Shown: positions 14,712-33,575 of the stretch, one piece after another
Layout of the letters: every line of letters starts with the position of its first letter
Numbering within the stretch: the first letter of the stretch is position 1
Virus record (IMG/VR): IMGVR_UViG_3300025141_000016
Span: 186,001 to 250,000 of that record
Direction: 5' to 3' (one strand)
Length of the DNA: 64,000 bases
The notes under the pieces: model-generated
Told to the model about the DNA's origin: nothing
What the model saw: the letters and a program-made list of their open reading frames with translations, nothing else
The model's database searches: none
Made by a program: the position numbers and the translations under genes

Positions 14712-15061
14712 GGGAACGTCCTCTGCTGGGTTCTGGGTTCCTCTACCTGTACCGGCCAACACCCCCTCTCGCACCCCCCTGTAGGAGTCCCCGCCCCCGA
14801 AACGCAATACTTGAAACGTACTTGTGACTACTCGATACATGGCCCATGTGACAGTCACAATCGTGAATGAAGTATTGGGGCTCCTGGGTATCGGGTTTCG
14901 CCCACCGTTAGCGGGGGGTTGGGGAGGCCGAATACAAGGTGGTTGTGATTATCACGAACACGATCCCTCCCTGTGAGGCCCGCCAATCCAGAGAACAAGT
15001 CAAGCCCCCGGAGATTTTTCTGGCATGGGGTTTGCATGGGAAAATACTGTATTGGGTAAAT

Positions 15062-15157
15062 GTAACTGTTAGGTTTGCAAACGTAACTACATGGTATGCA
15101 AACGTAACTGTATTGGTTGCGTTTGTGACAGTCACGATTGGCGTTCGTGACTGTCAC
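15062..15157. repeat. phased array of 11-bp palindromes GTRACWGTYAC (five units, some degenerate)
   Basis: Units start at 15062, 15083, 15104, 15125 and 15147 (spacing 21, 21, 21, 22); a lone copy at 14848. Confidence 0.85.
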
Positions 15158-15175
15158 ACCCAAAACCCCAAACGC

Positions 15176-15211
15176 AAAAAACCCCCGACCGCCACGGAGG
15201 CAGTCGGGGGT
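15176..15211 (-). terminator. intrinsic terminator
   Basis: CCCCCGACTGCC-TCCGT-GGCGGTCGGGGG followed by TTTTTT on the minus strand. Confidence 0.8.
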
Positions 15212-15281
15212 CGGGGGTTGTTGGGGGTTGGGTCAGCGGCGGCTGTCTCGGGTCAGTCCGAGGGTCCGTCAGTTCGTGGGC

Positions 15282-15581
15282 CTACTCGTAGTGCGGAGTC
15301 TCGGTGGGGAAGGTCCGAGCGGGGTGGTCTTCGACGTAGACCTCGACGGCGACCCCGCCGAGGACAGAGTAAATGTCTCCCTCCGCGTGATCGGCGTACC
15401 GCTGTTTGAGTTGGTTGACCATGGTGCCCACGCGCCCATCGTCGGGACCGGTGGGGGTGAACGGGAGCGGCACGGACGCGAGGGGTTCCCCAGCGTTGTA
15501 CCACCACCCGCCTTCCTCGGGTCCACCGAAATGGCGGGTGACCGCGTAGGCGTTGACGTATGTAGAGGTTGCGGTAGGCAT
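15282..15581 (-). CDS. hypothetical phage protein (GGPEEGGWWY motif)
   Basis: GGAGG RBS; FGGPEEGGWWY motif, which I recall from phage hypothetical proteins (not searched). Confidence 0.75.
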   Translation of the reverse strand: MPTATSTYVNAYAVTRHFGGPEEGGWWYNAGEPLASVPLPFTPTGPDDGRVGTMVNQLKQRYADHAEGDIYSVLGGVAVEVYVEDHPARTFPTETPHYE

Positions 15582-15640
15582 GAGAGCCCTCCAGTTTGAA
15601 AGTGTGTCAAACACCGAATGTGAATACTCGGTTCGTAAAC

Positions 15641-15694
15641 GTGACTGTCACAAGGGGTGCCTGTAACAGTCACAAGTGCATCTGTGACTGTTAC
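15641..15694. repeat. phased palindrome array (three units)
   Basis: GTGACTGTCAC 15641, GTAACAGTCAC 15663, GTGACTGTTAC 15684. Confidence 0.85.
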
Positions 15695-15759
15695 AAAGTG
15701 GGACCGCCCAATACACCAAAGGCCCCCTCCAGGGGGGAGGGGGACCGGTGAGGGGGGGA

Positions 15760-16200
15760 TCAGGCAGCGGACTCCTCGTCCTCCGCAGCCGCGACCTCGG
15801 TGGCACTGACCACTGAAACCGACAGAGCCGGGAAGGTCACCTTGCCCTTGCAGTCGGTCAGGGTCGGTCCCTTGACCGCAGCGATAGCGACCTTGGCCCT
15901 CTTCTTGAGGGACGCGATCAGCTTGGGGTCGGCGGTGAGGGCTTCGCGGGTGAGGGAATCGACGGTCACGCCGTTGAGGTGGCTCAATGCCGCAGCCAGG
16001 AGCGTCCAGGGGTCAGCCTTGGCCACGATGGGCTGGGTGTAGTCATCACCGCAACGGGTAGTGGCGACCGTGTGCAGGGTGACGATCTCGTCCACGTCGT
16101 TATCCCCGACGGGGAGGTCAGCGCGGGTCGCGGATTTCGCAGCGGCGAGCGCCTTATGAAGTGCCGCGATGGTCGCGGGGGAGAGGGAAGTGAGGTCCAT
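15760..16200 (-). CDS. hypothetical protein
   Basis: ATG 16200 after hairpin and GGAGA; has its own class E promoter. Confidence 0.75.
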   Translation of the reverse strand: MDLTSLSPATIAALHKALAAAKSATRADLPVGDNDVDEIVTLHTVATTRCGDDYTQPIVAKADPWTLLAAALSHLNGVTVDSLTREALTADPKLIASLKKRAKVAIAAVKGPTLTDCKGKVTFPALSVSVVSATEVAAAEDEESAA

Positions 16201-16274
16201 GAGAAGTCTCCATTGGCCCGTCATTCGGGCTCGTGGGGGGTGTTTTGTGTGGGTAGCGGGGCTCCCTACACTCC

Positions 16275-16307
16275 TATACGGAGAAGCAAGGGGGAGTTGA
16301 ACCCCCC
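16275..16307 (-). promoter_or_regulatory. class E promoter GGGGGGTTCAAC-N15-CGTATA
   Basis: One of eight copies with invariant spacing. Confidence 0.8.
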
Positions 16308-16328
16308 TCCGTCGAGAAAGTTGAGGGT

Positions 16329-16610
16329 TTAGAACGGCATGTCTTGGTCGTCTGCGGCCCAGGCGGGGATGACGGGTTGGTCCTGGGGCACCACAATGTC
16401 ATCCCCCGACGGCGTGTACCCGTAGATTTCGGCGGCAGTGGGCTCCCGCTCGTCCTCGTCCGGTTCGGGTCCGTAGACCACAGCAGCCAGGAGGTCGTGG
16501 CACCGTGCGAGTTCGGCTTCCTGCTGCTCTGGGAGCAGGGAGGGTGAGCGGTAGCCAGCGAGGGCGAAGTACGCCTCGCGGATGGTGGAGAGCAGTTCAG
16601 CGTGGGTCAT
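16329..16610 (-). CDS. hypothetical protein
   Basis: GGAG RBS; acidic C-terminus ending DDQDMPF. Confidence 0.65.
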   Translation of the reverse strand: MTHAELLSTIREAYFALAGYRSPSLLPEQQEAELARCHDLLAAVVYGPEPDEDEREPTAAEIYGYTPSGDDIVVPQDQPVIPAWAADDQDMPF

Positions 16611-16789
16611 GTGGCTCCGGGGGTGGTCTGTTCGGGCGAAGGTGCGTCAGGGTGCCATCCACACTTGAAGCAGCCCTTCCTCGTGTAGATGCCCACCTCT
16701 CCTTTGGGGAGGAAGGTCACGACGTTCTTGATGGCCTTTTTCTTACCGCACTGTTGGCACTTGGTCTTGATGGTCATGGTGCCGGTCAT
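16607..16789 (-). CDS. small Zn-ribbon protein
   Basis: CQQC...CFKC. Confidence 0.55.
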   Translation of the reverse strand: MTGTMTIKTKCQQCGKKKAIKNVVTFLPKGEVGIYTRKGCFKCGWHPDAPSPEQTTPGAT

Positions 16790-16807
16790 GGGAGGTTCCA
16801 GAGAGGG

Positions 16808-16984
16808 TCAAAGGGTGTAGTCGATCTCGACCACCCCCCGCTCGGGGGCGGGGTCCGGTCGTTCCAGCACAGGACGGGGAGGCACAGGACGAGGTGCATA
16901 GAGGGGGAGCCGTCGGCGCTCGCTCTCGCGTTCCTCACGCTCGCGGCGTTCGCGCTCGATGATGGCTGGGTGGATGTGGGTCAT
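16808..16984 (-). CDS. 58-aa charged protein (below the ORF-track cutoff)
   Basis: MTHIHPAIIERERREREERESERRRLPLYAPRPVPPRPVLERPDPAPERGVVEIDYTL; GGAGG RBS directly after a class E promoter. Confidence 0.7.
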   Translation of the reverse strand: MTHIHPAIIERERREREERESERRRLPLYAPRPVPPRPVLERPDPAPERGVVEIDYTL

Positions 16985-17001
16985 AGTAGGGCCTCCACCC
17001 T

Positions 17002-17034
17002 TATACGGAGATAGGGGGGTGAGTTGAACCCCCC
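17002..17034 (-). promoter_or_regulatory. class E promoter
   Basis: GGGGGGTTCAAC-N15-CGTATA. Confidence 0.8.
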
Positions 17035-17052
17035 AAAACCAAGTATTCGGGT

Positions 17053-17138
17053 GTGACAGTCACGTTTTGGGCGCGGTTTTGCCTGTGACAGTCACGTTTG
17101 AAAACGTGACTGTCACGTTTAGGGGGTGTGACAGTCAC
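17053..17138. repeat. palindrome array (four perfect GTGACWGTCAC)
   Basis: Units at 17053, 17085, 17106 and 17128. Confidence 0.9.
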
Positions 17139-17156
17139 GTTTAGGGGGTGTGGGGG

Positions 17157-17453
17157 TCAAGCGGTCCCTGCGGTGGCCTCGACCTCTTCCCAGCCGAAGG
17201 AAGCGCATCGGAGGACACGTCCATCCGACAGGCGGATGCGGTCACCGACGGAGGTGGAGCGGCATCCCTCACCAGGGAAGGTCGAGGTGACCAGAGCGTT
17301 CTCCCACCAGTAGTGTTCGATGGTGTTGGTCAGTTCAAAGACGCGGGGGTAGTCCGCGTCGGGCAGGTCCACATCAGCGACGTGGATGAACTCGGTGGGC
17401 TCCGGCCCGGACCCGAAGGTGGGGCGAGTGGCGTGAAAGACTGCGATGGACAT
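17157..17453 (-). CDS. YodL-like domain protein
   Basis: VFELTN...RSTSVGD...FGWEEV resembles the YodL RS[LM]SVGD motif; ATG 17453. Confidence 0.6.
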   Translation of the reverse strand: MSIAVFHATRPTFGSGPEPTEFIHVADVDLPDADYPRVFELTNTIEHYWWENALVTSTFPGEGCRSTSVGDRIRLSDGRVLRCASFGWEEVEATAGTA

Positions 17454-17514
17454 GGGCGCTCCTGTTGGCCTCTCGATGAGGCTCGTGGGGATGAGGGAAG
17501 GTTCTCTCACCCCC

Positions 17515-17547
17515 TATACGGAGATAGGAGGCCGAGTTGAACCCCCC
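17515..17547 (-). promoter_or_regulatory. class E promoter
   Basis: GGGGGGTTCAAC-N15-CGTATA. Confidence 0.8.
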
Positions 17548-17548
17548 C

Positions 17549-17762
17549 TGTCGTAAATAGGTAGAGCGCCGTCGGCCTTACTCAACCAGAAAGGTCTTTC
17601 GCCCCACCGGAGAGTAGCCTCGGGCGGGTGTCGTAAATCGGAAGGGCACCGTCGGGCTTACTCAACCGGAAAGGTCTTTCGCCCCACCGAGGAGTAGCCT
17701 CGGGTGTCGTAGATAGGCAGAGCCCCGTTGGGCTTACTCAACCGGAAAGGTCTTTCGCCCCA
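17549..17762. repeat. tandem repeat of a 76-80 bp unit (about 2.7 copies), possibly a structured RNA
   Basis: Units at 17549, 17629 and 17705 share CTTACTCAACCRGAAAGGTCTTTCGCCCCA; inverted partial copy at 18035-18060. Confidence 0.85.
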
Positions 17763-18052
17763 ACTTGCGGGGGGTGGAACCACAGGTCCAGTTCTGGAAC
17801 CACAGGTCCAGGGGCGCTCCCCCGTTGTTGTAAAAACCCCTGATCGGGGTGTCATCAGAACGGCGTGCGCGAAAACCCCAGTGAAGGCAAGGGTTTAGCG
17901 AATCGGGCGGCCCCGAGGACATCCCCGAGACCTCGGACGACATCGCTGTGGGAGGCTTGTGGGGTCAGATCGGTGACCCCACGGGTGAGACTACCGCCGT
18001 CTCGGACGGCAGCCGTTCCCCGTGGAACACGGGTCAACGGTGCCCTTCCGAT

Positions 18053-18574
18053 CTACGACACCCACTCGCCCCCACCGATGAAGGCCACGTCGGACCACAT
18101 CTCGGTGTTCAGGTCCAGTTGTCCTGGCACTATCCCACCGAGCGCGGTGTTCAGGTCGCGAATGATGTTGAAGGCGAGGTCGAAGTCTACGTCCTGAATC
18201 GCCCGTAGGGCTCTGCGGAGCCACGGAGCCATGGAGAGCCCTTCCTCCTCGGCCTGCTCTATCTCCTCTTGGGAGAAGACCGAGGGGACTTCCTTGCCGG
18301 TGTCTACATCGGTGCCGTTCACCTCGACGTTCCACCACCACCACACCTCACGGGACAGCCGGAGGTAGGGGTGGGTCTGGAGGTGGCCCCGGATGAGGGC
18401 ATCTCCTCCCACGTCCCTGACGAGCAGGGTCCGTCGGAACGTGCCGAGGGTCGAATCGGGCGGGAAGCTGTCGAGGTTTGCGGCACTCTCCAGCCGTTCG
18501 GCGTGCCGGGTTTCCAGCACGGTGTTGATCTCCATCTCGGAGAGGGGGAACAGGACGCGGATAGGGGTAGTCAT
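18053..18574 (-). CDS. hypothetical protein, paralog of 3772-4275
   Basis: GGAGG RBS; FPLSEMEI...PWLRRALRAI...MWSDV. Confidence 0.75.
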   Translation of the reverse strand: MTTPIRVLFPLSEMEINTVLETRHAERLESAANLDSFPPDSTLGTFRRTLLVRDVGGDALIRGHLQTHPYLRLSREVWWWWNVEVNGTDVDTGKEVPSVFSQEEIEQAEEEGLSMAPWLRRALRAIQDVDFDLAFNIIRDLNTALGGIVPGQLDLNTEMWSDVAFIGGGEWVS

Positions 18575-18641
18575 CGGGCACCTCCACAGGGGTAGACGCA
18601 GGGGGGTGTCCACTTCGCACACTTGGGGGGCCAGAAACGAC

Positions 18642-18673
18642 AAAAGCCCCCACTCCCAGGCGGGAGTGGGGGC
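18642..18673 (-). terminator. intrinsic terminator
   Basis: GCCCCCACTCCC-GCCT-GGGAGTGGGGGC-TTTT. Confidence 0.75.
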
Positions 18674-18764
18674 GGCGGATGTGTAGTCGGGGGGATGGGG
18701 GCTGAAACCCACCGCCCACGACCCCGAACAAGGCATCTGGGGGGCCGTGAGGGCGGGCAGGAGG

Positions 18765-19217
18765 TCAGGTAGGCTTGAAGCCCACCCTGGGAGTGGGTTC
18801 GGCTCGTTCGATGGCTTTGAGCACGTCTGGCACCTCGCCAGAAGCCTTGCGGGTCTTGATGACCGCATCAATGTCCTTGCGAGCGTCGTACCGCACGTTC
18901 GTCACGAAGTAAGTGTCGAAGCAGTCTCCGAGGACGTGGCGCACCACGTCCCAATCAGTGCCCTTGCGAGCCTTGAACCGGGGCGACGGGAACGTCACGG
19001 ACACGCTTCCAGCATCGGTGTCGTAGTGGACGTGGCTCTCGTCCCCCCGCTGGGTAGACGCAAGGTCACGAAGGAGAGCCTTCAGGGGGTCCAGAGCCTC
19101 CTGGGCGTTAGAGATATGGCCCGCGAGGCGGCAAGCCACGCGGGCGATTTCCTGGGCGCTGCCCCCGCGCTTGGCGAGGTCAGTGGCTTCGGTAATGAGG
19201 GGGGTCAGGTCTTTCAT
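18765..19217 (-). CDS. hypothetical protein
   Basis: ATG 19217 after GGAG. Confidence 0.7.
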   Translation of the reverse strand: MKDLTPLITEATDLAKRGGSAQEIARVACRLAGHISNAQEALDPLKALLRDLASTQRGDESHVHYDTDAGSVSVTFPSPRFKARKGTDWDVVRHVLGDCFDTYFVTNVRYDARKDIDAVIKTRKASGEVPDVLKAIERAEPTPRVGFKPT

Positions 19218-19268
19218 GGGGATACTCCAGGGGCCGGTTGGACACCGACCCAAAAGTGGGTCAGGTGT

Positions 19269-20150
19269 CTACAGCGCGATGGCGCACTCCGTGTGGAAGA
19301 CTCCACGCCCTTCAACATGGGCAGCGGTGGCGTTGGCCTCGATGGTGCCCTTGCATCCCTCTGCCGAGCAGACGCAGGCGAAGGGGACCACGACGGTCGA
19401 GTAGTCAACCGAGGAAGTGGTGGCCTCGGGAGTCGGAGCCATGGACGTTTTCAGGGCAGCTACCAACCGCGCACGTTCGGCAGCGAGTTCGGCCTCGGCC
19501 TTGGCGACCTCGGCAGCGAACTCAGCATCGAGTTCGGAGGCCACCGTCGCCAGGGTGGTGATGGTCGATGCTTGGCACAGCCCAGCCAGAGGGCACCCCT
19601 CGCACTGCGAAGACCGTGAGGACCACAGGCTGAAGCAGTGGGTGTTGTCGATGGCCACGCGCCGGAGGTCAGCCTCCGTAGCGTAGGACCCGGCAGTCAC
19701 GGCACCGACGGGGGGCAGGTAAGCCATCCCCGAATCCTCGGTGATCACGGAGATCGCCGCTGGGGCTTCCTCGGTGGCTTCCTCGGTGACCATCTCGGTC
19801 AGGGTGACCGCTGCCATCGTCTCTACCTCGGTAGCCTCGGTGACTTCCGGTGCTGGCGCAGCAGCCAACTCGGAGGCCAAGGCGTAGTACCCGCGACGTG
19901 GGTTGACGGCCATACCGTCCTTCTTCAAGCGCCCACCCGCGAGGGTGACGGCTCGGTGTCCGGCGAAGTAGGGCTTGCCCCGCTTCATCTTCGTGCCCCA
20001 GGTACCCCAGCCAGGGAAATCGGTCAGGGACTCGATATGGGCGATCACGTCGCGGAACCGTACTTCCTCCCCTCGGGGTCCGAGGGCGCGGAGCGCGGCC
20101 AGGACATAGGGCATCCAAGCCGTGGTTTCCAGGGTGGTCGGGAAGTTCAT
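19269..20150 (-). CDS. Mrr-N-like winged-helix protein with Cys-rich C-terminal domains
   Basis: VLAALRALG...RLKKDG...PRRGYYAL; CEGCPL...C; CVC...HTEC. Confidence 0.6.
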   Translation of the reverse strand: MNFPTTLETTAWMPYVLAALRALGPRGEEVRFRDVIAHIESLTDFPGWGTWGTKMKRGKPYFAGHRAVTLAGGRLKKDGMAVNPRRGYYALASELAAAPAPEVTEATEVETMAAVTLTEMVTEEATEEAPAAISVITEDSGMAYLPPVGAVTAGSYATEADLRRVAIDNTHCFSLWSSRSSQCEGCPLAGLCQASTITTLATVASELDAEFAAEVAKAEAELAAERARLVAALKTSMAPTPEATTSSVDYSTVVVPFACVCSAEGCKGTIEANATAAHVEGRGVFHTECAIAL

Positions 20151-20226
20151 GGGGTGTCTCCAGTTGCCTCGCTCGATGCGGGTCATGGGGATGGGGTGAA
20201 AGGGTGCGGGGACGCCCCTACACTTC

Positions 20227-20259
20227 TATACGGAGAAGCAAGGGGGGGTTGAACCCCCC
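20227..20259 (-). promoter_or_regulatory. class E promoter
   Basis: GGGGGGTTCAAC-N15-CGTATA. Confidence 0.8.
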
Positions 20260-20271
20260 TGCCTGTTGGTT

Positions 20272-21489
20272 TCAGTCAGTTTCCTCGTCAGTGAAGCAAC
20301 CGCCGGTCACCACAGCGTCGATCAGGCGCATCGCGATGGTCCGAGAGTCCTTGTCCAGCCGGTGCAACCACGCTGCGAAACCCCTCTTCAAGAGGTTGGC
20401 AGGAGGGGTGCCGTCGGACAGCCAGAGCACGTCTTCGCACTCCGACAGGACTTCACACAGACCACGGTGGGTGAACTCCGCGTAGAGTTCTTCCGACTCG
20501 ATAGCCGCACGAATCTTGTCCGTAGCCTTGCCCAACTGGTCGATGACGGCAGGTGCCGCTTCTACCAGCGCCGGGTACTTCGACCGCAGGATCGCGGACT
20601 CATCATCCCAGTGCATGTGGGTGAACTCAACGAACCGACCCATCCGGTCGAGGATCGAAGCATCCATCCGCTGACTCGACATACGACCCGTCTCGTCACC
20701 CGTACCGCAGGAGTTCGCGGTGAAAGCGAACTGCGTTCCAGGGAACAAGGTGTGGACTTCACCCGTCGGACCAACGATCCGCTTGGAGGTGGTGTCCAGG
20801 GTCAACCGGAACTCCTCAATCTGCTCGGGGGTGCCCCGGTCAACATCGGAGAACAGGATCAGCGCGGGACGCGCAACACCGTCGGTTCCAACAACACCGT
20901 TGACGATGGCGTTCCAGAGAGTCCCGTAGGACCATGAGGTGCCAGCGTCGGTGATCTCGCGGGAGTAGAACCACCGCTTCACTTCCGTACCCGGAGTGAA
21001 GGTGTAGGCGAACGCCGGAGTGCGGGTGTAGCTGGAGAAGGCGTGAACCACCGCATCCTTACCGGTTCCGGGGCCACCCCAGATGAACACGGCACGCTTC
21101 TTGGCGAGGGCCAGGAGCGCACGCTGGTAAGCGGTGCGTGCCTTCCCTTTGGTGGGGAACGCATAGGCCCAGGGGAGGGGCAGGCAGAAGTGGAGGGGAA
21201 TCCCATGGTCCACTCGACACACGACTCCGAGGAGATCGCGGGTCAGGTCGGTGACCTCGGGAGCCGCCTTACGCCGCTTCCCTTTGAGGGCGCGGTCAAA
21301 GGCATCCAGAGCCTTGGTGCTGACGGTGAGAGCGCCAGGGTGAGCATCGAGGTACGCCTCGGGGGTCATCCCGTGAGCCTCGACCACATGGTCGAGCAGG
21401 GAGTGGGCGCGGTGTCCACACTCGATGCACTCGACGCGACCATCAACCACCGTGAGGTTGGGCGCGAGAGCAGTTGCAGCAGCAGGCAT
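20272..21489 (-). CDS. MoxR/CobS-like AAA+ ATPase with N-terminal C2H2 Zn finger
   Basis: CIEC...H...H; Walker A GGPGTGKD; atypical Walker B LILFSDVD; TANS; ASILDR. Confidence 0.85.
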   Translation of the reverse strand: MPAAATALAPNLTVVDGRVECIECGHRAHSLLDHVVEAHGMTPEAYLDAHPGALTVSTKALDAFDRALKGKRRKAAPEVTDLTRDLLGVVCRVDHGIPLHFCLPLPWAYAFPTKGKARTAYQRALLALAKKRAVFIWGGPGTGKDAVVHAFSSYTRTPAFAYTFTPGTEVKRWFYSREITDAGTSWSYGTLWNAIVNGVVGTDGVARPALILFSDVDRGTPEQIEEFRLTLDTTSKRIVGPTGEVHTLFPGTQFAFTANSCGTGDETGRMSSQRMDASILDRMGRFVEFTHMHWDDESAILRSKYPALVEAAPAVIDQLGKATDKIRAAIESEELYAEFTHRGLCEVLSECEDVLWLSDGTPPANLLKRGFAAWLHRLDKDSRTIAMRLIDAVVTGGCFTDEETD

Positions 21490-21574
21490 TGGGAGTCTCC
21501 AGTTGGCCTCTCGATGAGGCATAGGGAAGATGAAAGGGAACAGGATGGGGGGGTGTGCTCACCCCCTGCACCCA

Positions 21575-21607
21575 TATACGGAGATAGGGGGGTGAGTTGA
21601 ACCCCCC
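21575..21607 (-). promoter_or_regulatory. class E promoter
   Basis: GGGGGGTTCAAC-N15-CGTATA. Confidence 0.8.
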
Positions 21608-21626
21608 TGGAGGAAGAAAAGGTAAG

Positions 21627-21653
21627 AAAACTGACCCCCCGGAGGGGGTCAGT
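21627..21653 (-). terminator. intrinsic terminator
   Basis: ACTGACCCCC-TCCG-GGGGGTCAGT-TTT immediately after the VWA gene. Confidence 0.7.
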
Positions 21654-21657
21654 GAGA

Positions 21658-23447: not shown

Positions 23448-23461
23448 TGGGCATAGGTTTT

Positions 23462-26646: not shown

Positions 26647-26669
26647 TCGTTACTCAATACACGGAGGGT

Positions 26670-26765
26670 GTGACTGTCACAAACGTAAACGTAACAGTCA
26701 CACTCGGTAAACGTAACAGTATGGTATGCAAACGTAACAGTTAGGTATGCAAACCTAACAGTCAC
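26670..26765. repeat. phased palindrome array (five units, some degenerate)
   Basis: Units at 26670, 26691, 26713, 26734 and 26755; shares GGTATGCAAACGTAAC with the 15062 array. Confidence 0.85.
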
Positions 26766-27223
26766 AAACACACCCCAACGCCGACCTGTCAGAACCGACG
26801 ACAAAACCCCTGGGGGGGTACCGGCCCCCCCTGTTGGCCACATTGAAACCGCGTCCAAAATCGGAACGCTAATCCCAACCCCCCTTGGACAAACCCTTTG
26901 AAGGGTTGACCTCCACACAGACCCCCCTTCGCTGGAAGGCCCCCCTTTCTGTGTGCGTCCGAGGGGCGACTCCCCGAATGGCAAGTGGCTGTTGGTGGCC
27001 CTTTCTTATCTGGCGGTCACAGGTGTCCTCCCCCCGGTCACAGGTGTCCGGGCGTGATCCCACGATCCCTTTCGTCGCCGGTACGGTCCAGGGCACCATG
27101 GGAACCGACAGGAACCCATAGGAAATGACAGGCAAGCAGTTGAAACATAGGCGCTTTCTATCGGGGGGTGGTGTCGTCTGGGGTCTGGGTACAGATGAAG
27201 CGCACCCCTCACCAGAAGCACCC

Positions 27224-27652
27224 ATGCCTGACCTCATCACTCTCGACATATTCACCTTGTTTGGCCGTGATGATGGCCTCGGGGTCGAAGTCCAACCCGT
27301 CATCCCTGTGCGAACAAAAGGCGACACGGAACAAAGGTTTGAGGCGTTCCACAGGATGAACCCGCATGTCTACGGCCACATTGTTGAGATCGCCCTTGAC
27401 CTCAAAGGCCGGGGTTTCGGTCGCTGTAGCATCTGGCTCATCTTCAACCGCCTGCGGTGGCTCTACGCCCTCCAGACGCAAGGGGACGAGTTCAAGCTCA
27501 ACAACAACTACACGGCGTACTACGCCCGGTTGGTGATGGCGACCGTCCCCGACCTCGACGGGTTCTTTGAGACGCGGTTGCACAAAGGGCAAGACCCTTA
27601 CGTTCCCGATCTTGTGGCGTTGGGCTTCGGCGCGAGATTGACCCATGAATGA
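27224..27652 (+). CDS. hypothetical phage protein (FKLNNN..AYYAR motif)
   Basis: FEAFHRMNPHVY...RW...FKLNNNYTAYYAR...FFETR. Confidence 0.7.
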   Translation: MPDLITLDIFTLFGRDDGLGVEVQPVIPVRTKGDTEQRFEAFHRMNPHVYGHIVEIALDLKGRGFGRCSIWLIFNRLRWLYALQTQGDEFKLNNNYTAYYARLVMATVPDLDGFFETRLHKGQDPYVPDLVALGFGARLTHE

Positions 27653-28262
27653 CGTTGTGGATTTACTGTTCGATTGGCAGGACGAGGCAGAGGCCCGTAG
27701 GCGCGAGGCTGCTGAAGCCCCCGTCGAGCGTGGTACAAAAGGCAGTGGCCCAGCCCCACTCCCTTGGCCTCCCCGCGAGGTCACGGAGGAAGAACTCGCC
27801 AGTGGTTCGACCCGGACATGCAAGACGTGTCGGGGGACGTACCCCGAAACCCCCGAGTTCTACGTCATACGTCAAAGCGGCCCGAGGAAAGGATATGCGG
27901 GAACGGAGTGTCGGGAGTGCCAAAACCAGCGAACCCGCCACTTCACCGCGCAGAAGACACTTCCCTTTCGCTGTAGGAGGATTCACGGGGAAGCAAAGAG
28001 GCGTGGGATCGAGTGGGCCTTCGATTCCCCCGAAGTCCTACGCGAGTTCTACGGTGCTCCCTGTCATTACTGCGGGGGCGAGGTCGAGCACCGTCTTGGT
28101 CTGGACCGGGTGGACAACGACAAAGGCTACGTTCCCGGCAACGTGGTTCAATGTTGTGCGAGGTGCAACTGGATGAAAAGGGAACTCGCCGTAGACGAGT
28201 GGCTGGCTCACATGCGGCGGGTGTTGGATCACACCTCTCAATCAGGAAGCGGTTGTGAGTGA
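27645..28262 (+). CDS. HNH endonuclease
   Basis: CHYCG...LDRVDNDKGYVPGNVVQCCARCNWMK. Confidence 0.85.
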   Translation: MNDVVDLLFDWQDEAEARRREAAEAPVERGTKGSGPAPLPWPPREVTEEELASGSTRTCKTCRGTYPETPEFYVIRQSGPRKGYAGTECRECQNQRTRHFTAQKTLPFRCRRIHGEAKRRGIEWAFDSPEVLREFYGAPCHYCGGEVEHRLGLDRVDNDKGYVPGNVVQCCARCNWMKRELAVDEWLAHMRRVLDHTSQSGSGCE

Positions 28263-28944
28263 CCGCGAAGTCCTCACCCTCAACATGCTCATTGAGGACG
28301 CTGTGGTCGAGGGCGAGTCTGATTCCCACCGCGTATGGATGCGGAAACACCGAGAGGTCGCCGCGACAGGGAACGGGCTTCGACGGGCGTGGCCGTGGCC
28401 TCCCCGTGTGGTCTTTCCTTCGGAAAGGGCAGGTCCGTGTCGCCAGTGCGTAGTGTGCGACGAGGTGTACCCCCTCACAGACGAGTTTTTCCCAGCCAAC
28501 AAGAACCGCCAGAAGACCCGGATCGTCTCCCATCGGAAGGAGTGCCGTGGTTGTGCTCGTATCCGTCACAGGAACCTTGAACGCCACAAGGTCCGAGACA
28601 CCCCCTTGCAGTATCGCTACAGAATGATCCGAAAGGGTGCGCTACGACGGGGGCATCGGTGGGGGTTCAAGTCTCCCGAGGGTTTGCGTGGGTATCTGGA
28701 TGCTCCCTGCCACTATTGCGGGGGAGAGGTGGAGACTCGACTTGCCCTCGACCGCATCGACAGCATGAAGGGGTACACCCCCGGCAACGTGGTTTCGTGT
28801 TGCTGGCGGTGTAACCGCTGCAAGGTCGATCTCTCCACGGACGAGTGGTACGCCCACATGGAGAAGATCCTGGCTCACCGGAAGGGGGGTGGAGAAGACC
28901 TTTCACCGAGTAATGGAGGGAGTCTATCTGACCCCAGGAGTTGA
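28255..28944 (+). CDS. HNH endonuclease, tandem paralog
   Basis: CHYCG...LDRIDSMKGYTPGNVVSCCWRCNRCK. Confidence 0.85.
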   Translation: MSDREVLTLNMLIEDAVVEGESDSHRVWMRKHREVAATGNGLRRAWPWPPRVVFPSERAGPCRQCVVCDEVYPLTDEFFPANKNRQKTRIVSHRKECRGCARIRHRNLERHKVRDTPLQYRYRMIRKGALRRGHRWGFKSPEGLRGYLDAPCHYCGGEVETRLALDRIDSMKGYTPGNVVSCCWRCNRCKVDLSTDEWYAHMEKILAHRKGGGEDLSPSNGGSLSDPRS

Positions 28945-28947
28945 GCC

Positions 28948-29499
28948 ATGAGCCATCAGGACATTTTCGAGATTTTCAGTATGCCTGACCCTTCGGATGC
29001 GAAGCCCGAGCCTCGGGTTGTCCACGCGCCACCTCCAGCGTGGGCGACGTTGGAGGATGCTGTAGCCTTTGTGCAAGCCAATCTCGATGATGGTGTGGAG
29101 TGTCCTTGCTGCAATCAGTATGCCCGTCGTTACAAGCGGAGGTTCAACGCTACGATGACCCGTTCCCTCATCTGGCTGGTTCGGGAGTGGGAGGACAACG
29201 GGAACACCTGGGTAGAGGTGCCCAAACACGGTCCTCGTTGGCTTGTTCGGTCTAACCAGCTTCCGACGGTACGGTGGTGGGGTTTGGTCAAGCGTCCTCC
29301 GAGTAACGATCCGGCCTTGAAGCATGAGGGCCTTTGGTGTCCGACGCAGAAGGGTGTGGATTTCGCTCATGGTCGCATCAAGGTGCCGGAGCGTGCGGTT
29401 ACCTACCGGGGTGTTGTAGAAGACCTCATTGGAAAGGACGTGGCTGTACAGGACACTCTGGGCAAGAAGTTCAACTATGCCGAGTTGATGTCAACGTAG
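28948..29499 (+). CDS. hypothetical protein (CPCC; winged-helix-like)
   Basis: CPCCNQ; RWWGLV...GLWCPTQKG. Confidence 0.7.
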   Translation: MSHQDIFEIFSMPDPSDAKPEPRVVHAPPPAWATLEDAVAFVQANLDDGVECPCCNQYARRYKRRFNATMTRSLIWLVREWEDNGNTWVEVPKHGPRWLVRSNQLPTVRWWGLVKRPPSNDPALKHEGLWCPTQKGVDFAHGRIKVPERAVTYRGVVEDLIGKDVAVQDTLGKKFNYAELMST

Positions 29500-29565
29500 C
29501 CAAGAGGAGGGGGGTCCATTGTTGCTCCGTTCCGGTAAGGGGATTCTGACACGGAGGACTCCCCT

Positions 29566-29985
29566 ATGGCAGAAAAGATCCCTGACTTCTCTTGGTTGAA
29601 AGACCTTCCTCCCCCTGACCCAAAGATCGCGGCTGCTCTTGCCGAGAAACATGCGGCGAAGTGGGACCACCAGACCTGGGACGTAGTGATCTCCGACCGG
29701 GAGATGATCCTGCGACACTTGGAACGCTCTTGTGGGGGCAAGCACCCCAAGCCCTTCATGTCCACCGAGGGACACAACGACGTAGCAGTGGGCGAAGGCC
29801 CGACTCCCAAAGGGTTGCTCTACTCCCTCGACATGTTGATGACCCTCCGCGATGAGGGGCTCGTGACCTCATGGAAGGACGGCAAAGTCTACGTCACGAC
29901 GAACAGCCCTTCCACGACCATTGAGTGGTGGCTCGGAGATGAAGAGTTTGAGGGACCGGGTGTCCTCAACGGGGAGGAAATCTGA
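29566..29985 (+). CDS. hypothetical protein
   Basis: GGAGG RBS; part of a coupled operon. Confidence 0.7.
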   Translation: MAEKIPDFSWLKDLPPPDPKIAAALAEKHAAKWDHQTWDVVISDREMILRHLERSCGGKHPKPFMSTEGHNDVAVGEGPTPKGLLYSLDMLMTLRDEGLVTSWKDGKVYVTTNSPSTTIEWWLGDEEFEGPGVLNGEEI

Positions 29986-30452
29986 TGGGTCACGCGCATT
30001 TAGGAAACATCTCCGAGTTCGTCATTCGATACCTGTACGCCAAGGGGCAGGTGAGCATTGATGACATTCTCAATCAGATGCACCGGAAAGGGGAAACCCT
30101 CCATGCCTCCGAAGATGAGTACGACGACTACGGGACGATGGGCAGCGGCGTAGAGTCGGTCATTACGTTTCACCGGGGGAAAGGGGTGATTGAGCCCGCT
30201 GACCCCACTCCAGAGGAAACGGCTCTGTTGGATTACCCAGACAAACTCACCAACAGCAACTTCACTCAATCATGCGAGGGCTTTGGGTTCCCGTCCGATG
30301 CCGAACTGGTTGGCTATGGCTTCGCCAAAGAGGACAACAAGTTGTGGGAGGCTTTCTACAACATCAAGTGGCGATTCTGTGAGGGCCAGCGCAACCGCTA
30401 CAAGAACGGTGGCACATCCAACTACGACCACCTCGGGTCAATCACTGTTTGA
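29985..30452 (+). CDS. hypothetical protein
   Basis: TGATG coupling to the upstream gene. Confidence 0.7.
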   Translation: MGHAHLGNISEFVIRYLYAKGQVSIDDILNQMHRKGETLHASEDEYDDYGTMGSGVESVITFHRGKGVIEPADPTPEETALLDYPDKLTNSNFTQSCEGFGFPSDAELVGYGFAKEDNKLWEAFYNIKWRFCEGQRNRYKNGGTSNYDHLGSITV

Positions 30453-30461
30453 GGGGAAGTC

Positions 30462-31238
30462 ATGCTTTTGTACCACGGCACATCGGAGCGTGTTGCTCGC
30501 CTTGCTTTGAAGGAGGGGTTGTCCCCTCGGAACGAACTGGATGAGGACGGCAACTGGGAGGAGCACCCGTCATGTGGGGCGATGGTCTACCTGACGACTG
30601 CCTACGCTGGGTTCTTCGCTCTCAACGCCACGAAAGAGGGTGAGCGGTGGGGGATCATCGAGATCGACTCCGACCGCTTGGACGAGGACAACCTGCGCCC
30701 GGACGAGGACTTCTTGGAGCAGGCATCCCGCTCGGAGGAGAACCGGAAGGCATTTCACGCCATGGGCCTGGAACATGACCCCGAGGATGTGCTTGCCATG
30801 GATGCGTCCATGGCGGAACGGACTCGTTGGATTCGTGACCACATCGAGTTCTTCGGCCCTTGGTGGGGGAACGGCGACTTCTGGAAGAAGTCTATCGACG
30901 GCATTGGGAACTGCGCCCACTTCGGCTGGATTCCGGTCGAGGCGATTACGCGGGTGGGGCTGTTTGACCCCGAGTCGAACGGCACCATCGCCATGGTTGG
31001 TCTGGACCCCTCCATCTCGCTGATGAACTTCGCCATCTGCGAGGGGAAGTATCGTGCTCACACTCAATGGCTGGTGGGCGACGAGATCGATCCGGGTGCT
31101 CTCCTGGGCGCGACATGGACCAAGGAAGCCGTGGCCGACAACCCCCACGTCGCTGACAGTATGCAGCCCCACATCGAGCGGATGCGGGAGGCCCTGGCGT
31201 TCCGTGATGGCCTGGAGGTGATCCGTGCTGTTCGATAA
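30462..31238 (+). CDS. ADP-ribosyltransferase-fold protein (untagged)
   Basis: LLYHGTS...EGLSPR...VYLT...IPVEAI. Confidence 0.65.
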   Translation: MLLYHGTSERVARLALKEGLSPRNELDEDGNWEEHPSCGAMVYLTTAYAGFFALNATKEGERWGIIEIDSDRLDEDNLRPDEDFLEQASRSEENRKAFHAMGLEHDPEDVLAMDASMAERTRWIRDHIEFFGPWWGNGDFWKKSIDGIGNCAHFGWIPVEAITRVGLFDPESNGTIAMVGLDPSISLMNFAICEGKYRAHTQWLVGDEIDPGALLGATWTKEAVADNPHVADSMQPHIERMREALAFRDGLEVIRAVR

Positions 31239-31932
31239 TCTCCATGCGTTGCTCCAAGGCGGCGACCTGCGGACAGCCCGCGCTGTCTACCGGAAGATAC
31301 GATCCCAGATGGCTCCCGAGTGGCTGGCCAACCTCTACGGTGATTGCATCGCGGTGGAGATTGGCCTCACCCGCATCTCGGAGTCTCCAGTGAACCTGTA
31401 TCGGGTGTCGGCCCAGGTGATCCTGCTCGGGGATACCGAAGACAAGCCCGTAGGAACCGTCAGGAAGGGGCTCTACGCCCCCCACACCCTTTCTTATGAG
31501 GACGGGGAAGCCATCGAGGTTGGGGTGGGGGAGATCGCTGACGCATTGGACGTGGCTGCTGCCAGGGGCGGTGCCCTGTACGACTCCCTTCGACGGGAGG
31601 GGGAAGTAGAACCCATGTCTTCGGGCTGGCTGCACCTGGGTCAGATCGAACTGTTGCCCGCGTATCGGGGGCTGGGGATCTCCCACTATGTGATGAAGGA
31701 GATCGTCGCGGCGTTGGGTTCCAACGCGGTGGTGACTCTCCAGCCGTTCCCGCTTGGAACTGACCTGACCCCAACGCAGACCGATGCGGCAGCCGCCGCG
31801 TTGGAGGAGCACTGGGTTCGGTTCGGGGTCAAGAACGTGAGCATCGCCCACGATGGTTCTCGGATGCTGTGGTTTGACATGGCTTGTGTCAATCACGGCT
31901 CTCTACTGACTTATGAAGGAGCCCTCCCATGA
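31225..31932 (+). CDS. GNAT-family acetyltransferase (untagged)
   Basis: LHLGQIELLPAYRGLGIS acetyl-CoA motif; LEEHWVRFG. Confidence 0.7.
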   Translation: MLFDNLHALLQGGDLRTARAVYRKIRSQMAPEWLANLYGDCIAVEIGLTRISESPVNLYRVSAQVILLGDTEDKPVGTVRKGLYAPHTLSYEDGEAIEVGVGEIADALDVAAARGGALYDSLRREGEVEPMSSGWLHLGQIELLPAYRGLGISHYVMKEIVAALGSNAVVTLQPFPLGTDLTPTQTDAAAAALEEHWVRFGVKNVSIAHDGSRMLWFDMACVNHGSLLTYEGALP

Positions 31933-32279
31933 ATGACCCCTCCCTGCTGATCGAGCACGCACTCACCGAGGGGGAGTGTTTGGCTTTCCTCGACAGGTTC
32001 ACGGGCCTCAATCCCCACTGGAAGGGGGCCAGGGTTGCGGACGTGCTGGCGGTGCTCGATGACACGGACTCTCACTGTGGGGACATTGAGCAGGTCGTTG
32101 ACCACTTCAAGCCCACGGACACAGTAGAAAGTGCCCTGTACCGGATGGCTTCTTATGCGGTCCTCTACTCGGCCCACGGGGAGACGGTGGCCTCGCCCGT
32201 TGGTCTTCGTGACTTGGACGCACCCGGCAACCGGAACCGCATCCAGGCTCTCGTGGCAAAGGCACAGGGTCAGCCGTGA
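31929..32279 (+). CDS. hypothetical protein
   Basis: Overlaps both neighbours in the operon. Confidence 0.6.
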   Translation: MNDPSLLIEHALTEGECLAFLDRFTGLNPHWKGARVADVLAVLDDTDSHCGDIEQVVDHFKPTDTVESALYRMASYAVLYSAHGETVASPVGLRDLDAPGNRNRIQALVAKAQGQP

Positions 32280-32971
32280 CTGCCAAGCGTCATAGGTGGG
32301 TCTGCCCTACCTGCGAGGCAGGGGTGCTGGCTCCGAGCAAGCCTCGGCGTGATGATGTGCGGAGGTTCTGTCTGCCGTGCTCTGCCGAGACGGGTCGGAT
32401 GGTTGAGCGGACATGTCCTTCCCTGGACAAGAAGCGTGAACAGCGCCGTGTGAGCCGGAGCGAGCAGGACAAGAAGAAGCGGGCTACCGCCAAGCGCAAG
32501 GCCGAAGCCGAGGCCAAGGCACGGCATGAGCGGGAGGAGTCCCGTTGGTTCGTGGAGGGCCACGACATTCGCGAGGAGTTCGTTCGGCTGACTCGCTTCA
32601 CTCGGGTCTGGGCATCCATCCGAGGGAAGCCCACCCTGATGAGGTGGTGGAAGGGCTGGACGTTGACCACCTCGTATCGGTCGAAGGGAACACGAAGCCA
32701 GAGCGGCTACTGCAACGTGTACGGTCGCCAGATCAACATCTCGGTTTCGGACCATTCCAACTGGGCCTGTGTTCGCGAGACGCTGCTTCACGAGATGGTT
32801 CATGCGGTGCTGCCCCCGGAGGAAAACCACGGTGACCGGTTCCGCTACGGGCTGGCCCAGGCAGCACATGGGGTCGGCTACGTCCCCGAGGGAACGGTGA
32901 TCCCCGTGTCGGGGGCAACACACAAGGCCGACAACCTCATTGAACAATGCTTGATGGACATGGACAAATGA
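32276..32971 (+). CDS. SprT-like zincin metalloprotease with N-terminal Zn-ribbon
   Basis: ETLLHEMVH...HGDRF; CPTC...CLPC. Confidence 0.75.
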   Translation: MTAKRHRWVCPTCEAGVLAPSKPRRDDVRRFCLPCSAETGRMVERTCPSLDKKREQRRVSRSEQDKKKRATAKRKAEAEAKARHEREESRWFVEGHDIREEFVRLTRFTRVWASIRGKPTLMRWWKGWTLTTSYRSKGTRSQSGYCNVYGRQINISVSDHSNWACVRETLLHEMVHAVLPPEENHGDRFRYGLAQAAHGVGYVPEGTVIPVSGATHKADNLIEQCLMDMDK

Positions 32972-33405
32972 CCACCCCCAAACTCACCATCGAACTTGTG
33001 CCCAAGGGCCAGTGGGGCATGAACCTACGAAGCGAGTTGCCACGGGCAGCCTGGAACCGGCTCCGCAGGGACACCTACAAGGCGGCTGACTACCACTGCG
33101 AGGTCTGTGGTGGTGTGGGCAGCAAGCATCCAGTGGAGTGCCACGAGCGATGGCGCTACGACGACGACACCAAGACCCAGGTGTTGGAGGGGTTGATCGC
33201 CCTGTGCCCTGCGTGCCACGAGGTCAAGCACATTGGCCGTGCCGGTGCCGTGGGTCGGTTGGAGCACGCTGTCGCCCATCTGATGAAGGTGAATGGTTGG
33301 GAAGCTGACCGTGCCTTGGAGTACATAGACGATGCGTTCTCGCTCTGGGCGAAGCGGTCGCAAGCAGAGTGGACCCTGGACCTATCCTGGCTCCACGAAG
33401 GGTAG
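32968..33405 (+). CDS. HNH endonuclease
   Basis: CEVCG...ECHERW...LCPACHEVKH. Confidence 0.8.
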   Translation: MTTPKLTIELVPKGQWGMNLRSELPRAAWNRLRRDTYKAADYHCEVCGGVGSKHPVECHERWRYDDDTKTQVLEGLIALCPACHEVKHIGRAGAVGRLEHAVAHLMKVNGWEADRALEYIDDAFSLWAKRSQAEWTLDLSWLHEG

Positions 33406-33575
33406 GGTGGGGGTGTGTTCACCAAGACGGCCAGTTCCTTGTATTCACGAACCCCATTCCTTGTAATCACATTTCCAATCGTGACTTTCACACCCTGGAG
33501 GGGGGTTGTGGGGTTTCCGAATCCGGTAATACCGATTTGGAAACTTGACTGTCACAACCCTCCGAGGGAGAGAAC

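What the first reader, a model, noticed from the sequence alone, without database searches (positions are those of the whole stretch)
14848..33555. Helically phased arrays of an 11-bp palindrome (GTRACWGTYAC, 21-22 bp period) bracket the class E block
Seen: arrays at 15062/083/104/125/147, 15641/663/684, 17053/085/106/128 and 26670/691/713/734/755, with singles at 14848, 33481 and 33545. Some units are degenerate, and nearly all lie in AT-richer intergenic DNA. Spacing of two helical turns puts the sites on one face of the DNA. The two five-unit arrays share GGTATGCAAACGTAAC and flank the 15.2-26.6 kb region. Inference: cooperative binding by a dimeric protein, acting as a centromere or iteron, as a looping silencer of the block, or as an injection checkpoint like the T5 injection-stop region.
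Basis: partly seen in the sequence, partly recalled or inferred. Interest (0 to 1): 0.72.

Follow-up and report, generated by a model that had tools for sequence, protein, structure and literature searches.

The report
Phased palindrome arrays in jumbo phage
An uncultivated marine jumbo phage carries five clusters of an 11-bp palindrome spaced exactly two DNA turns apart, kept at the same places in a diverged relative; they are most likely cooperative binding sites (operators) for a small phage winged-helix regulator that also controls its own gene, which is a familiar kind of phage control element.

Summary
GTRACWGTYAC occurs 12 times exactly in the window, against 0.06 expected. All 12 copies in the 297-kb viral record lie in window 14848-26701. 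Every site scoring at least 14 bits lies in 14848-33555. Gaps are 21-22 bp, with single gaps of 32 and 64 bp, all whole helical turns.

All clusters are intergenic and sit at the heads of transcription units. A syntenic 286-kb relative (55-95% protein identity) has arrays at all five equivalent places. Three phages keep a site ending 21 nt before the start codon of a MarR-like winged-helix gene (33576-34187).

My best reading (confidence 0.5) is cooperative tandem operators of this autoregulated winged-helix protein, controlling four flanking accessory operons.

A replication-origin (iteron) reading is not excluded (about 0.17). The same palindrome at the same spacing lies inside replisome-organiser genes of unrelated phages. 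The record's deepest interior GC-skew trough falls at window 14862.

No ParA, tubulin, integrase or replisome organiser was found in the 297 kb. This argues against a centromere but proves nothing, because the record may be incomplete. The T5-like injection-stop idea has no support.

Novelty is modest: a new member of a known kind. No binding was shown.

The parts
14848..14858 (.). Single strong palindrome GTGACAGTCAC, about 137 bp upstream of the likely start (about 14711) of the minus-strand gene 13968-14711.
   Evidence: Exact match, PWM 25 bits. The relative has an equivalent site 135 bp before its homologue's start and, as here, 214 bp from the last array unit.
14945..14955 (.). Weak variant site GTGATTATCAC.
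   Evidence: PWM 14.8 bits. It is conserved in the relative with the centre flipped, so the sigma-70-like GATAAT found there changes strand in the relative and is probably not a promoter.
15062..15157 (.). Array A: five phased units (15062, 15083, 15104, 15125, 15147). Two are strong and three degenerate. It lies directly after an intrinsic-terminator-like hairpin.
   Evidence: A five-unit array sits at the syntenic place in the relative, but there the strong units are at the other end.
15180..15212 (-). Terminator-like hairpin with a T run, ending the unit upstream of array A.
   Evidence: Conserved in the relative.
15620..15694 (.). Array B: three exact units (15641, 15663, 15684) plus an in-phase degenerate unit (15620). 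It lies 60 nt upstream of the likely ATG (15581) of the minus-strand gene 15282-15581.
   Evidence: The relative has two units 58 nt before the homologue's ATG.
15723..15743 (-). Terminator-like hairpin ending the unit upstream of array B.
   Evidence: Conserved in the relative.
17053..17138 (.). Array C: four exact units (17053, 17085, 17106, 17128). It starts 19 bp after the stop of the minus-strand gene 17157-17453 and ends about 25 bp upstream of a class-E-like promoter.
   Evidence: The relative has three units plus a CTTGTATTT-type unit at the same place.
17000..17034 (-). Class-E-like promoter motif (GGGTTCAACTC, 8 nt, TATCTCCGTATA) driving 16808-16984 and the genes downstream of it.
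   Evidence: It is one of about 24-28 copies in the record.
26670..26765 (.). Array D: five phased units (26670, 26691, 26713, 26734, 26755). It starts 24 bp after the stop of the plus-strand gene 26407-26646 and lies upstream of the plus-strand operon 27224-33405.
   Evidence: The relative has four units at 21-bp spacing at the same place.
26790..26990 (+). Noncoding block of about 200 nt just downstream of array D, nearly identical in the relative. It may be the promoter or leader that array D controls, or a small RNA.
   Evidence: Alignment, fold, unique in the genome, no Rfam match.
33438..33491 (.). Three phased units upstream of the winged-helix gene: two invariant CTTGTAWTCAC units (33438, 33460) and GTGACTTTCAC (33481).
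   Evidence: All three are invariant or nearly so in three phages.
33545..33555 (.). Proximal site TTGACTGTCAC, ending 21 nt before the ATG of 33576 and next to the ribosome-binding site.
   Evidence: The same 21-nt distance is found in the 286-kb relative and in L013.
33576..34187 (+). Candidate binder. Residues 1-112 are conserved: an N-terminal strand-helix, a linker and a MarR/ArsR-like winged helix-turn-helix (54-110). The Pro/Lys-rich tail is not conserved.
   Evidence: Pfam MarR_2, E 2e-5, 25 bits, below the 27-bit cut-off. Alignments. Profile against PDB. Model. Fold search.
12798..14711 (-). Unit downstream of array A. Its first gene is fast-evolving (35% identity to the relative, against 78-90% for neighbours).
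27224..33405 (+). Operon downstream of array D, carrying accessory genes: endonuclease VII/HNH-like, SprT-like, HNH and unknowns.

Best explanation
The palindromes are tandem operator sites for a phage-encoded dimeric winged-helix protein, most likely the product of 33576-34187. Each 11-13-bp dyad (yGTGAC-W-GTCACr) would take one dimer. Spacing of two turns would put 3-5 dimers side by side on one face of the DNA. They would then bind cooperatively and form a stable nucleoprotein block at the head of a transcription unit. The proposed regulon is local and has five targets: the units starting at about 14711 (array A plus sites 14945 and 14848), 15581 (B), 16984 (C), 27224 (D), and the regulator's own gene. 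At its own gene, a site 21 nt before the ATG and a three-unit array 64 bp upstream would give negative autoregulation. Shown here: the sites, their confinement to this region, their phasing, their intergenic position, and their conservation in position and motif in relatives. Inferred: the identity of the binder, cooperativity, and the sign of the effect. I favour repression because the proximal site at the regulator gene lies between any possible promoter and the ribosome-binding site.
For: The motif is non-random and is confined to 19 kb of the 297-kb record. The centre base is A or T in no fixed order, so the sites have no polarity, as expected for a symmetric dimer. Every gap is a whole number of helical turns. 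Every cluster lies between genes, upstream of a unit, and two follow terminator-like hairpins. A syntenic relative (55-95% protein identity) has arrays at all five equivalent places. Distances to start codons are kept: 60 vs 58 nt for B, about 137 vs 135 nt for the A single site, and 21 nt for the regulator gene in three phages. The identity of the strong units drifts, which points to selection on the array as a whole. The gene 33576 encodes a MarR/ArsR-like winged helix. It is the only gene in the 12-36 kb region with a sequence-specific DNA-binding domain match to a transcription-regulator family in my Pfam and PHROG scans, apart from a weak Ros/MucR-like match on 20272. In the central block the intergenic signal is a different, genome-wide promoter motif. 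The flanking units lack that motif and have the arrays instead.
Against: No binding or expression data exist. The complex prediction with DNA was not run by the tool. No consistent sigma-70-type promoter could be placed relative to the sites. Array C lies upstream of a promoter motif, about 25 bp beyond its -35-like element, rather than over it. More distant homologues of the protein (52% and 35% identity) have no such palindromes nearby. Co-occurrence therefore holds only within one clade and cannot single out this gene. The protein lacks the helices that make a MarR dimer. The same palindrome at the same spacing lies in replisome-organiser genes of unrelated phages, and a GC-skew trough falls here. 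Both favour the origin rival.
Confidence: 0.5

Rival explanations
1. The arrays are origin iterons. They would be lambda-ori-like sets of dyad-symmetric initiator sites at two-turn spacing that wrap DNA to open a nearby duplex. The winged-helix protein would be the initiator and would autoregulate, and the extra clusters would act as copy-control or secondary origins.
For: A blind pattern scan of 2.9 million viral contigs found five unrelated contigs with GTGACWGTCAC at 21-22 bp. In three of them the sites lie inside a replisome-organiser gene (L009, Pfam Phage_rep_org_N, E 3e-41) or inside organiser-like winged-helix ORFs (L003, L004). The deepest interior minimum of cumulative GC skew in the record is at genome position 200,862, which is window 14,862, next to array A. 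Plus-strand and minus-strand genes both shift by about +0.07 across this point. The arrays are AT-richer than the genome. From established knowledge, tandem repeats of about 22 bp in groups of 5, 3 and 1 are typical of iteron origins.
Against: There are five separate clusters, each at the head of a unit with conserved distances to start codons. No replisome organiser was found in the 297 kb. The protein is only 105-200 aa with a variable tail and resembles generic regulators. No distinct AT-rich unwinding element lies beside any array. The exact position of the skew minimum comes from gene-level composition, and only the broad trough (about 195-213 kb) is informative. Neighbouring large genes are a UvrD-like helicase, polyvalent proteins and ribonucleotide reductase, not an initiator-helicase-loader set.
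Confidence: 0.17
2. The arrays are boundary elements or roadblocks, possibly looping together. Protein-coated arrays would stop RNA polymerase running out of the divergent central block and insulate the flanking cassettes, perhaps by array-to-array contacts as with lambda OL-OR.
For: Arrays C and D begin 19 and 24 bp after the stop codons of the outermost genes of the divergent block, with no terminator hairpin between. Arrays A and D share a 16-mer and the five-unit format. Single sites lie at 64, 97 and 214-277 bp, distances that suit short loops.
Against: Arrays A and B already follow terminator-like hairpins. A class-E-like promoter restarts transcription right after array C. The sites at the regulator gene do not bound anything. 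Looping cannot be tested from sequence.
Confidence: 0.12
3. The arrays are a partition centromere, like parC or tubC, bound by a winged-helix adaptor comparable to TubR.
For: Tandem repeat arrays plus a small autoregulated winged-helix protein match the general form of type III (TubZRC) centromeres. This comparison rests on established knowledge only.
Against: No tubulin/TubZ and no ParA (AAA_31) was found in the 297 kb. ParB_N-like matches occur only inside two giant polyvalent proteins and fall below the cut-off. No integrase or other sign of a plasmid or prophage state was found. The gene after 33576 encodes only 73 aa. The record may be incomplete (CheckV 67%), and ParM-type actins were not searched.
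Confidence: 0.05
4. The arrays are an injection-stop checkpoint like the phage T5 first-step-transfer boundary.
For: None beyond the presence of repeats. Large polyvalent, possibly injected, proteins are encoded nearby.
Against: No end repeats are recorded for this record. The sites lie 67-74% along it. The five clusters are spread over 19 kb and are tied to gene starts. Contig data gave no molecule ends.
Confidence: 0.02

Closest known systems
Phage lambda OR/OL tandem operators with CI
   Same: Three or more adjacent dyad-symmetric sites at about two helical turns, implying cooperative dimer binding. Clusters lie kilobases apart on either side of a gene block. The regulator gene is itself under operator control.
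   Different: The candidate binder is a winged helix, not a lambda-type HTH with a C-terminal oligomerisation domain. There are up to five units per cluster and five clusters. No lysogeny genes were found. Overlap of the sites with promoters has not been shown.
Streptomyces phage phiC31 repressor with dispersed conserved inverted repeats, and P1 C1 with dispersed operators
   Same: One phage regulator would act on many intergenic operator copies ahead of several transcription units.
   Different: Those operators are mostly single sites spread over the whole genome. Here the sites are tandem and phased and are confined to 19 kb.
Omega repressor of pSM19035 and ParR/parC-type repeat arrays
   Same: Arrays of 4-10 abutting repeats ahead of several promoters are coated cooperatively by small dimers. 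The regulator is autoregulated.
   Different: Those binders are ribbon-helix-helix proteins, the repeats are 7-11 bp, and the arrays double as centromeres with a partner ATPase. No such ATPase was found here.
Lambda ori and plasmid iterons; origins inside replisome-organiser genes
   Same: A period of about 21-22 bp and dyad-symmetric units. The identical 11-bp palindrome occurs inside replisome-organiser genes of unrelated phages (L009, L004, L003).
   Different: Here the arrays are intergenic, number five, and are not linked to any recognisable initiator gene.
Mycobacteriophage L5 stoperators
   Same: Repressor sites in short intergenic gaps that could block elongating polymerase.
   Different: Stoperators are asymmetric, single, orientation-dependent and genome-wide.

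Membership tests
MarR/ArsR-type winged-helix regulator | Winged helix-turn-helix domain recognisable by sequence or fold | tested here: inconclusive
   Pfam MarR_2, E 2e-5, 25 bits, under the 27-bit cut-off. Family profile against PDB gives best E 5e-5, with MarR, ArsR and DtxR regulators among the matches. The fold search gives Z about 6 to many winged-helix proteins, none standing out. The model has pLDDT of only 66-74 in this domain.
MarR/ArsR-type winged-helix regulator | MarR dimerisation helices on both sides of the winged helix | tested here: not met
   Only a strand (2-6), a helix (10-22) and a linker precede the domain. The C-terminal tail is not conserved and is predicted to be disordered.
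MarR/ArsR-type winged-helix regulator | Palindromic sites in its own promoter region (autoregulation) | tested here: met
   Sites lie 21 nt and about 85 nt before the ATG in three phages. Binding itself has not been shown.
Lambda-type cooperative tandem operators | Three or more adjacent dyad sites at whole helical turns | tested here: met
   Gaps of 21-22 bp in all arrays, plus 32 and 64 bp.
Lambda-type cooperative tandem operators | Sites overlap the -35/-10 elements of the regulated promoters | tested here: inconclusive
   Consensus scans give no conserved promoter. The host and its promoter type are unknown.
Lambda-type cooperative tandem operators | Cooperative binding and long-range looping between clusters | not testable with these tools
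   This needs footprinting, AFM or 3C.
Iteron or lambda-type replication origin | Tandem initiator sites of about 22-bp period | tested here: met
Iteron or lambda-type replication origin | Initiator gene (Rep, O or replisome organiser) containing or adjoining the repeats | tested here: not met
   PF09681 is absent from the 297 kb at E up to 1. The adjacent proteins have no initiator match. The record may be incomplete.
Iteron or lambda-type replication origin | Adjacent AT-rich unwinding element | tested here: inconclusive
   The arrays themselves are 41-51% G+C against 59.5% for the genome, but no separate AT-rich tract is seen.
Iteron or lambda-type replication origin | GC-skew inflection at the site | tested here: inconclusive
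   The interior minimum lies at window 14,862 within a broad trough at 195-213 kb. The fine position is set by gene composition, and the skew arms are asymmetric.
Partition centromere (parS, parC, tubC) | Partner NTPase (ParA, ParM or TubZ) encoded with it | tested here: not met
   No AAA_31 and no tubulin match in the 297 kb. ParM was not searched.
T5-type injection-stop region | Position near a physical genome end, inside a terminal repeat | not testable with these tools
   The record is listed without end repeats. Only assembled contigs were available, so molecule ends could not be seen.
L5-type stoperators | Asymmetric sites, one orientation relative to transcription, genome-wide | tested here: not met
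   The sites are dyad-symmetric with either centre base and are confined to 19 kb.

The most novel reading that the evidence does not exclude
The arrays and the rare winged-helix protein form a combined system in a marine jumbo phage. The same phased palindromes would serve as replication-origin iterons (an O-some-like wrap near the GC-skew trough) and as operators or boundaries for flanking accessory cassettes. They would use a DNA word that unrelated phages place inside their replisome-organiser genes. That would define a new initiator family for giant phages.
Probability: 0.12. Interest if true: 0.65.

Novelty: new member of a known kind. Interest (0 to 1): 0.42.

Why it matters
Gene control in uncultivated jumbo phages is almost unknown. 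This case offers a clean, testable cis/trans pair: one 11-bp word, five conserved clusters and one candidate protein. It could be tested entirely in a laboratory host with synthetic DNA. It also marks the edges of cassettes whose gene content differs between two related phages. Finally, it links a specific palindrome to replisome-organiser genes in other phages, which gives a lead for finding origins. If it is only an operator regulon, it is ordinary biology in an unusual genome.

Tried and rejected
- Near-identity DNA search of the phage collection found no match.
- Protein tblastn of 33576 against phages found nothing. The CobS-like gene gave only two distant hits.
- The search for related loci with 33576 and with the CobS-like gene returned only a second record of the same phage. 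The three array-bearing loci L002, L006 and L008 are that same phage (99.97-100% identity) and are not independent.
I walked about 40 kb of it by gene look-ups instead.
- Complex prediction (two copies of residues 1-115 plus a 23-bp site) was not folded by the tool, so it gives no evidence either way.
- The full-length AlphaFold model is poor (mean pLDDT 50). The fold search gave only generic winged-helix matches, including RctB domain 1 at Z 6.0, which does not stand out.
- Pairwise comparison of 33576 with the organiser-like ORFs of L003 and L009 showed no similarity.
- More distant homologues P0004 and P0011 have no palindromes or other arrays nearby.
- The sigma-70 consensus promoter at 14977-14948 was rejected, because its GATAAT lies in a palindromic variant site and flips strand in the relative.
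- A literature text search for the 11-mers returned only primers.
- Rfam found nothing in 12-36 kb.
- Read laying had only assembled contigs. It showed a strain variant that keeps arrays A and B and assembly breaks at the repeated class-E motif, but gave no information on ends or transcription.
- An RNA-hairpin role for single units was rejected, because a 5-bp stem with a 1-nt loop cannot form.
- Host factors recalled from memory (CRP/FNR, LexA, NtcA, Fur, CtrA, DnaA, NrdR) do not match the word. This was not tested further.

Full report
WHAT THE RECORD IS. The window is bases 186,001-250,000 of a 297,104-bp IMG/VR viral contig. The contig is linear, has no end repeats, and CheckV estimates it as 67% complete. 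It has 59.5% G+C and is held by marine metagenome runs. It has a weak HK97-capsid match, many giant ORFs, a UvrD-like helicase, ribonucleotide reductase and polyvalent proteins. It is therefore an uncultivated marine jumbo phage with an unknown host. No near DNA relative exists in the phage collection.

THE OBSERVATION. GTRACWGTYAC has 12 exact copies in the window against 0.06 expected, and 18 copies with one mismatch against 2.55 expected. Three listed units (15083, 15104, 26713) keep only the left half-site but are in exact phase. All 12 exact copies in the 297 kb lie in window 14848-26701. With a weight matrix built from the 12 sites, every hit of at least 14 bits lies in 14848-33555. The information is in 11-13 bp (yGTGAC-W-GTCACr), and the AAAC/GTTT flanks are only a tendency. 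The centre base is A or T in no order, so the sites have no polarity.

Start-to-start gaps are 21 or 22 bp, apart from one of 32 bp and one of 64 bp. All are whole numbers of 10.5-bp turns. Random placement gives such phasing in fewer than 1 in 20,000 trials for four sites. I added four items: a weak site at 14945, an in-phase degenerate unit at 15620, and two invariant in-phase units (CTTGTAWTCAC) at 33438 and 33460. The last two make 33481 the third unit of an array.

WHERE THE CLUSTERS SIT. I called genes with a codon-usage model trained on the record's long ORFs and corrected some starts using the genes called in a relative. A minus-strand block (12798-24562) and a plus-strand block (25183-34410) diverge from about 24.6-25.2 kb. 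The positions are as follows.
- Array A follows a terminator-like hairpin and precedes the unit starting at about 14711. Sites 14945 and 14848 lie in that unit's 450-bp upstream region.
- Array B follows another hairpin and ends 60 nt before the ATG at 15581.
- Array C starts 19 bp after the stop of 17157-17453 and ends about 25 bp upstream of a promoter-like motif.
- Array D starts 24 bp after the stop of 26407-26646 and precedes the operon 27224-33405.
- The last cluster precedes 33576-34187.
These positions rest.

A second, unrelated intergenic motif (GGGTTCAACTC, 8 nt, TATCTCCGTATA) occurs about 24-28 times across the record. Except at array C, an intergenic gap in this region carries either this motif or a palindrome array.

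CONSERVATION. A search of 5.8 billion proteins with the first 115 residues of 33576 found an 87% homologue on a 1.1-kb contig (L013). It also found a 66% homologue on a 286-kb ENA contig. Walking that contig gave about 40 kb that is syntenic with the window at 55-95% protein identity. It carries palindrome arrays at all five equivalent places.

Distances to start codons are kept: 58 vs 60 nt for B, 135 vs about 137 nt for the single site of A, and 214 bp from that site to the array in both phages. The proximal site ends 21 nt before the regulator's ATG in all three phages. Which units are strong differs. In array A the strong pair is at opposite ends in the two phages. This points to selection on the array as a whole. 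Gene content differs between the two phages right next to arrays C, A and D.

WHO BINDS. The product of 33576 has a Pfam MarR_2 match just under the cut-off. It has a conserved core of 112 residues (strand, helix, linker, winged helix) and a variable tail. Its family profile matches MarR, ArsR and DtxR regulators in the PDB at E from 5e-5. The family is rare, with 13 hits among 1.84 billion representatives. The conserved sites just ahead of its own gene are the main argument that it is the binder.

The argument is limited. Homologues at 52% and 35% identity have no such palindromes nearby. Co-occurrence therefore holds only within the clade. No binding was computed.

MECHANISM. I favour cooperative tandem operators. 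One dimer would bind per dyad, so 3-5 dimers would lie on one DNA face, giving a switch-like block at the head of four accessory units plus negative autoregulation. Repression is inferred at the regulator gene, because the proximal site lies between any possible promoter and the ribosome-binding site. For array C, which lies upstream of a promoter motif, activation or a boundary role is equally possible. I could not place promoters. Consensus scans are inconsistent between the two phages. A companion word WGTATTS has 9 of its 10 intergenic copies in these regions. It may be a promoter element or a variant half-unit.

RIVALS. The origin reading has real support. A blind scan of 2.9 million viral contigs for two phased sites found five unrelated contigs. 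In three of them the sites lie inside a replisome-organiser gene or an organiser-like winged-helix ORF. The deepest interior minimum of cumulative GC skew is at window 14,862, inside a broad trough, and genes on both strands shift together across it.

Against the origin reading, there are five clusters tied to gene starts. No organiser or other initiator was found. The protein is small and generic. The fine position of the skew minimum reflects gene composition.

A centromere lacks a motor: no ParA, no tubulin and no integrase were found. The record may be incomplete, so this is not proof. A boundary or looping role fits arrays C and D but not A and B, which already follow hairpins. The T5-type injection stop has no support.

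VERDICT. The finding is a real, conserved, local set of phased protein-binding sites. It is most likely an operator regulon of an autoregulated winged-helix protein (0.5). A minority chance (about 0.17) is that it marks a replication origin. It is a new member of a known kind and of moderate interest.

Noticed in passing
Window 16236-16305, 17000-17034, 17476-17545, 20188-20257, 21536-21605, 23376-23445 and 24599-24668 (minus strand), and 25091-25125 (plus strand); also genome-wide: A promoter-like motif of about 32 nt (GGGTTCAACTC, 8 nt, TATCTCCGTATAgg) occurs about 24-28 times in the 297 kb, nearly always 30-140 nt upstream of a gene. Clusters lie at genome 177-180 kb and 202-211 kb. It is conserved in the relative. 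It may be read by a phage-specific sigma factor or RNA polymerase, and it causes assembly breaks in metagenome contigs.
   Followed up: partly
Window 26790-26990: A noncoding block of about 200 nt just after array D is nearly identical to the 286-kb relative, more conserved than the flanking proteins. It is unique in the genome, has predicted hairpins but no informative covariation, and has no Rfam match. It could be a leader, a promoter region or a small RNA.
   Followed up: partly
Loci L009 2950-2985, L004 2690-2725, L003 480-860, L005 2211-2290, L007 2823-2885: Unrelated viral contigs carry the same palindrome at 21-22 bp. In L009 it lies inside a Phage_rep_org_N replisome-organiser gene. 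In L004 and L003 it lies inside organiser-like winged-helix ORFs, read as RDSH or VTVT peptide repeats. In L005 there are four perfect 22-bp repeats between genes in a 48% G+C phage. In L007 it lies at the 3' end of a terminase gene.
   Followed up: partly
Window 14871, 14930, 15048, 15109, 15622, 15709, 17042, 26655, 33440: The word WGTATTS has 10 intergenic copies in the 297 kb, and 9 of them lie in the palindrome regions. CTTGTATTC-type units replace palindrome units in phase, upstream of the regulator gene and in the relative's array C.
   Followed up: partly
Window 20272-21489 and 21658-23307 (minus strand): A CobS/MoxR-like AAA+ protein carries a weak N-terminal Ros/MucR-type zinc-finger match (E 1e-4, below the cut-off). 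It lies next to a CobT-like vWA protein with an acidic Asp/Glu/Gly-rich N-terminal region of about 190 residues. Both are conserved in the relative. The Ros/MucR match hints at an alphaproteobacterial host.
   Followed up: no
Window 10643, 11240, 12260, 34411, 35205, 60244 and at least seven more genes elsewhere in the record: At least 13 genes share an N-terminal module of about 35 residues (of the type ...RLIRLASSMPVGSDERKAIL...), fused to unrelated C-terminal parts. One protein carries the module twice.
   Followed up: no
Window 16329-16984, 27010-28950; L016 10640-11306; L014 12323-13936: Gene-content differences between this phage and the 286-kb relative lie directly next to arrays C, A and D. 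The arrays therefore mark the edges of exchangeable accessory cassettes.
   Followed up: partly
Window 13968-14711 (minus strand): The first gene downstream of array A is only 35% identical to its counterpart in the relative, while neighbours are 78-90% identical. It has a C-terminal zinc-ribbon-like Cys/His motif. It looks like a fast-evolving target of the proposed regulation.
   Followed up: no
Window 4729-10478 and 45505-49248: Giant polyvalent proteins carry ART-PolyVal domains and a ParB_N-like domain that falls below the cut-off.
   Followed up: no
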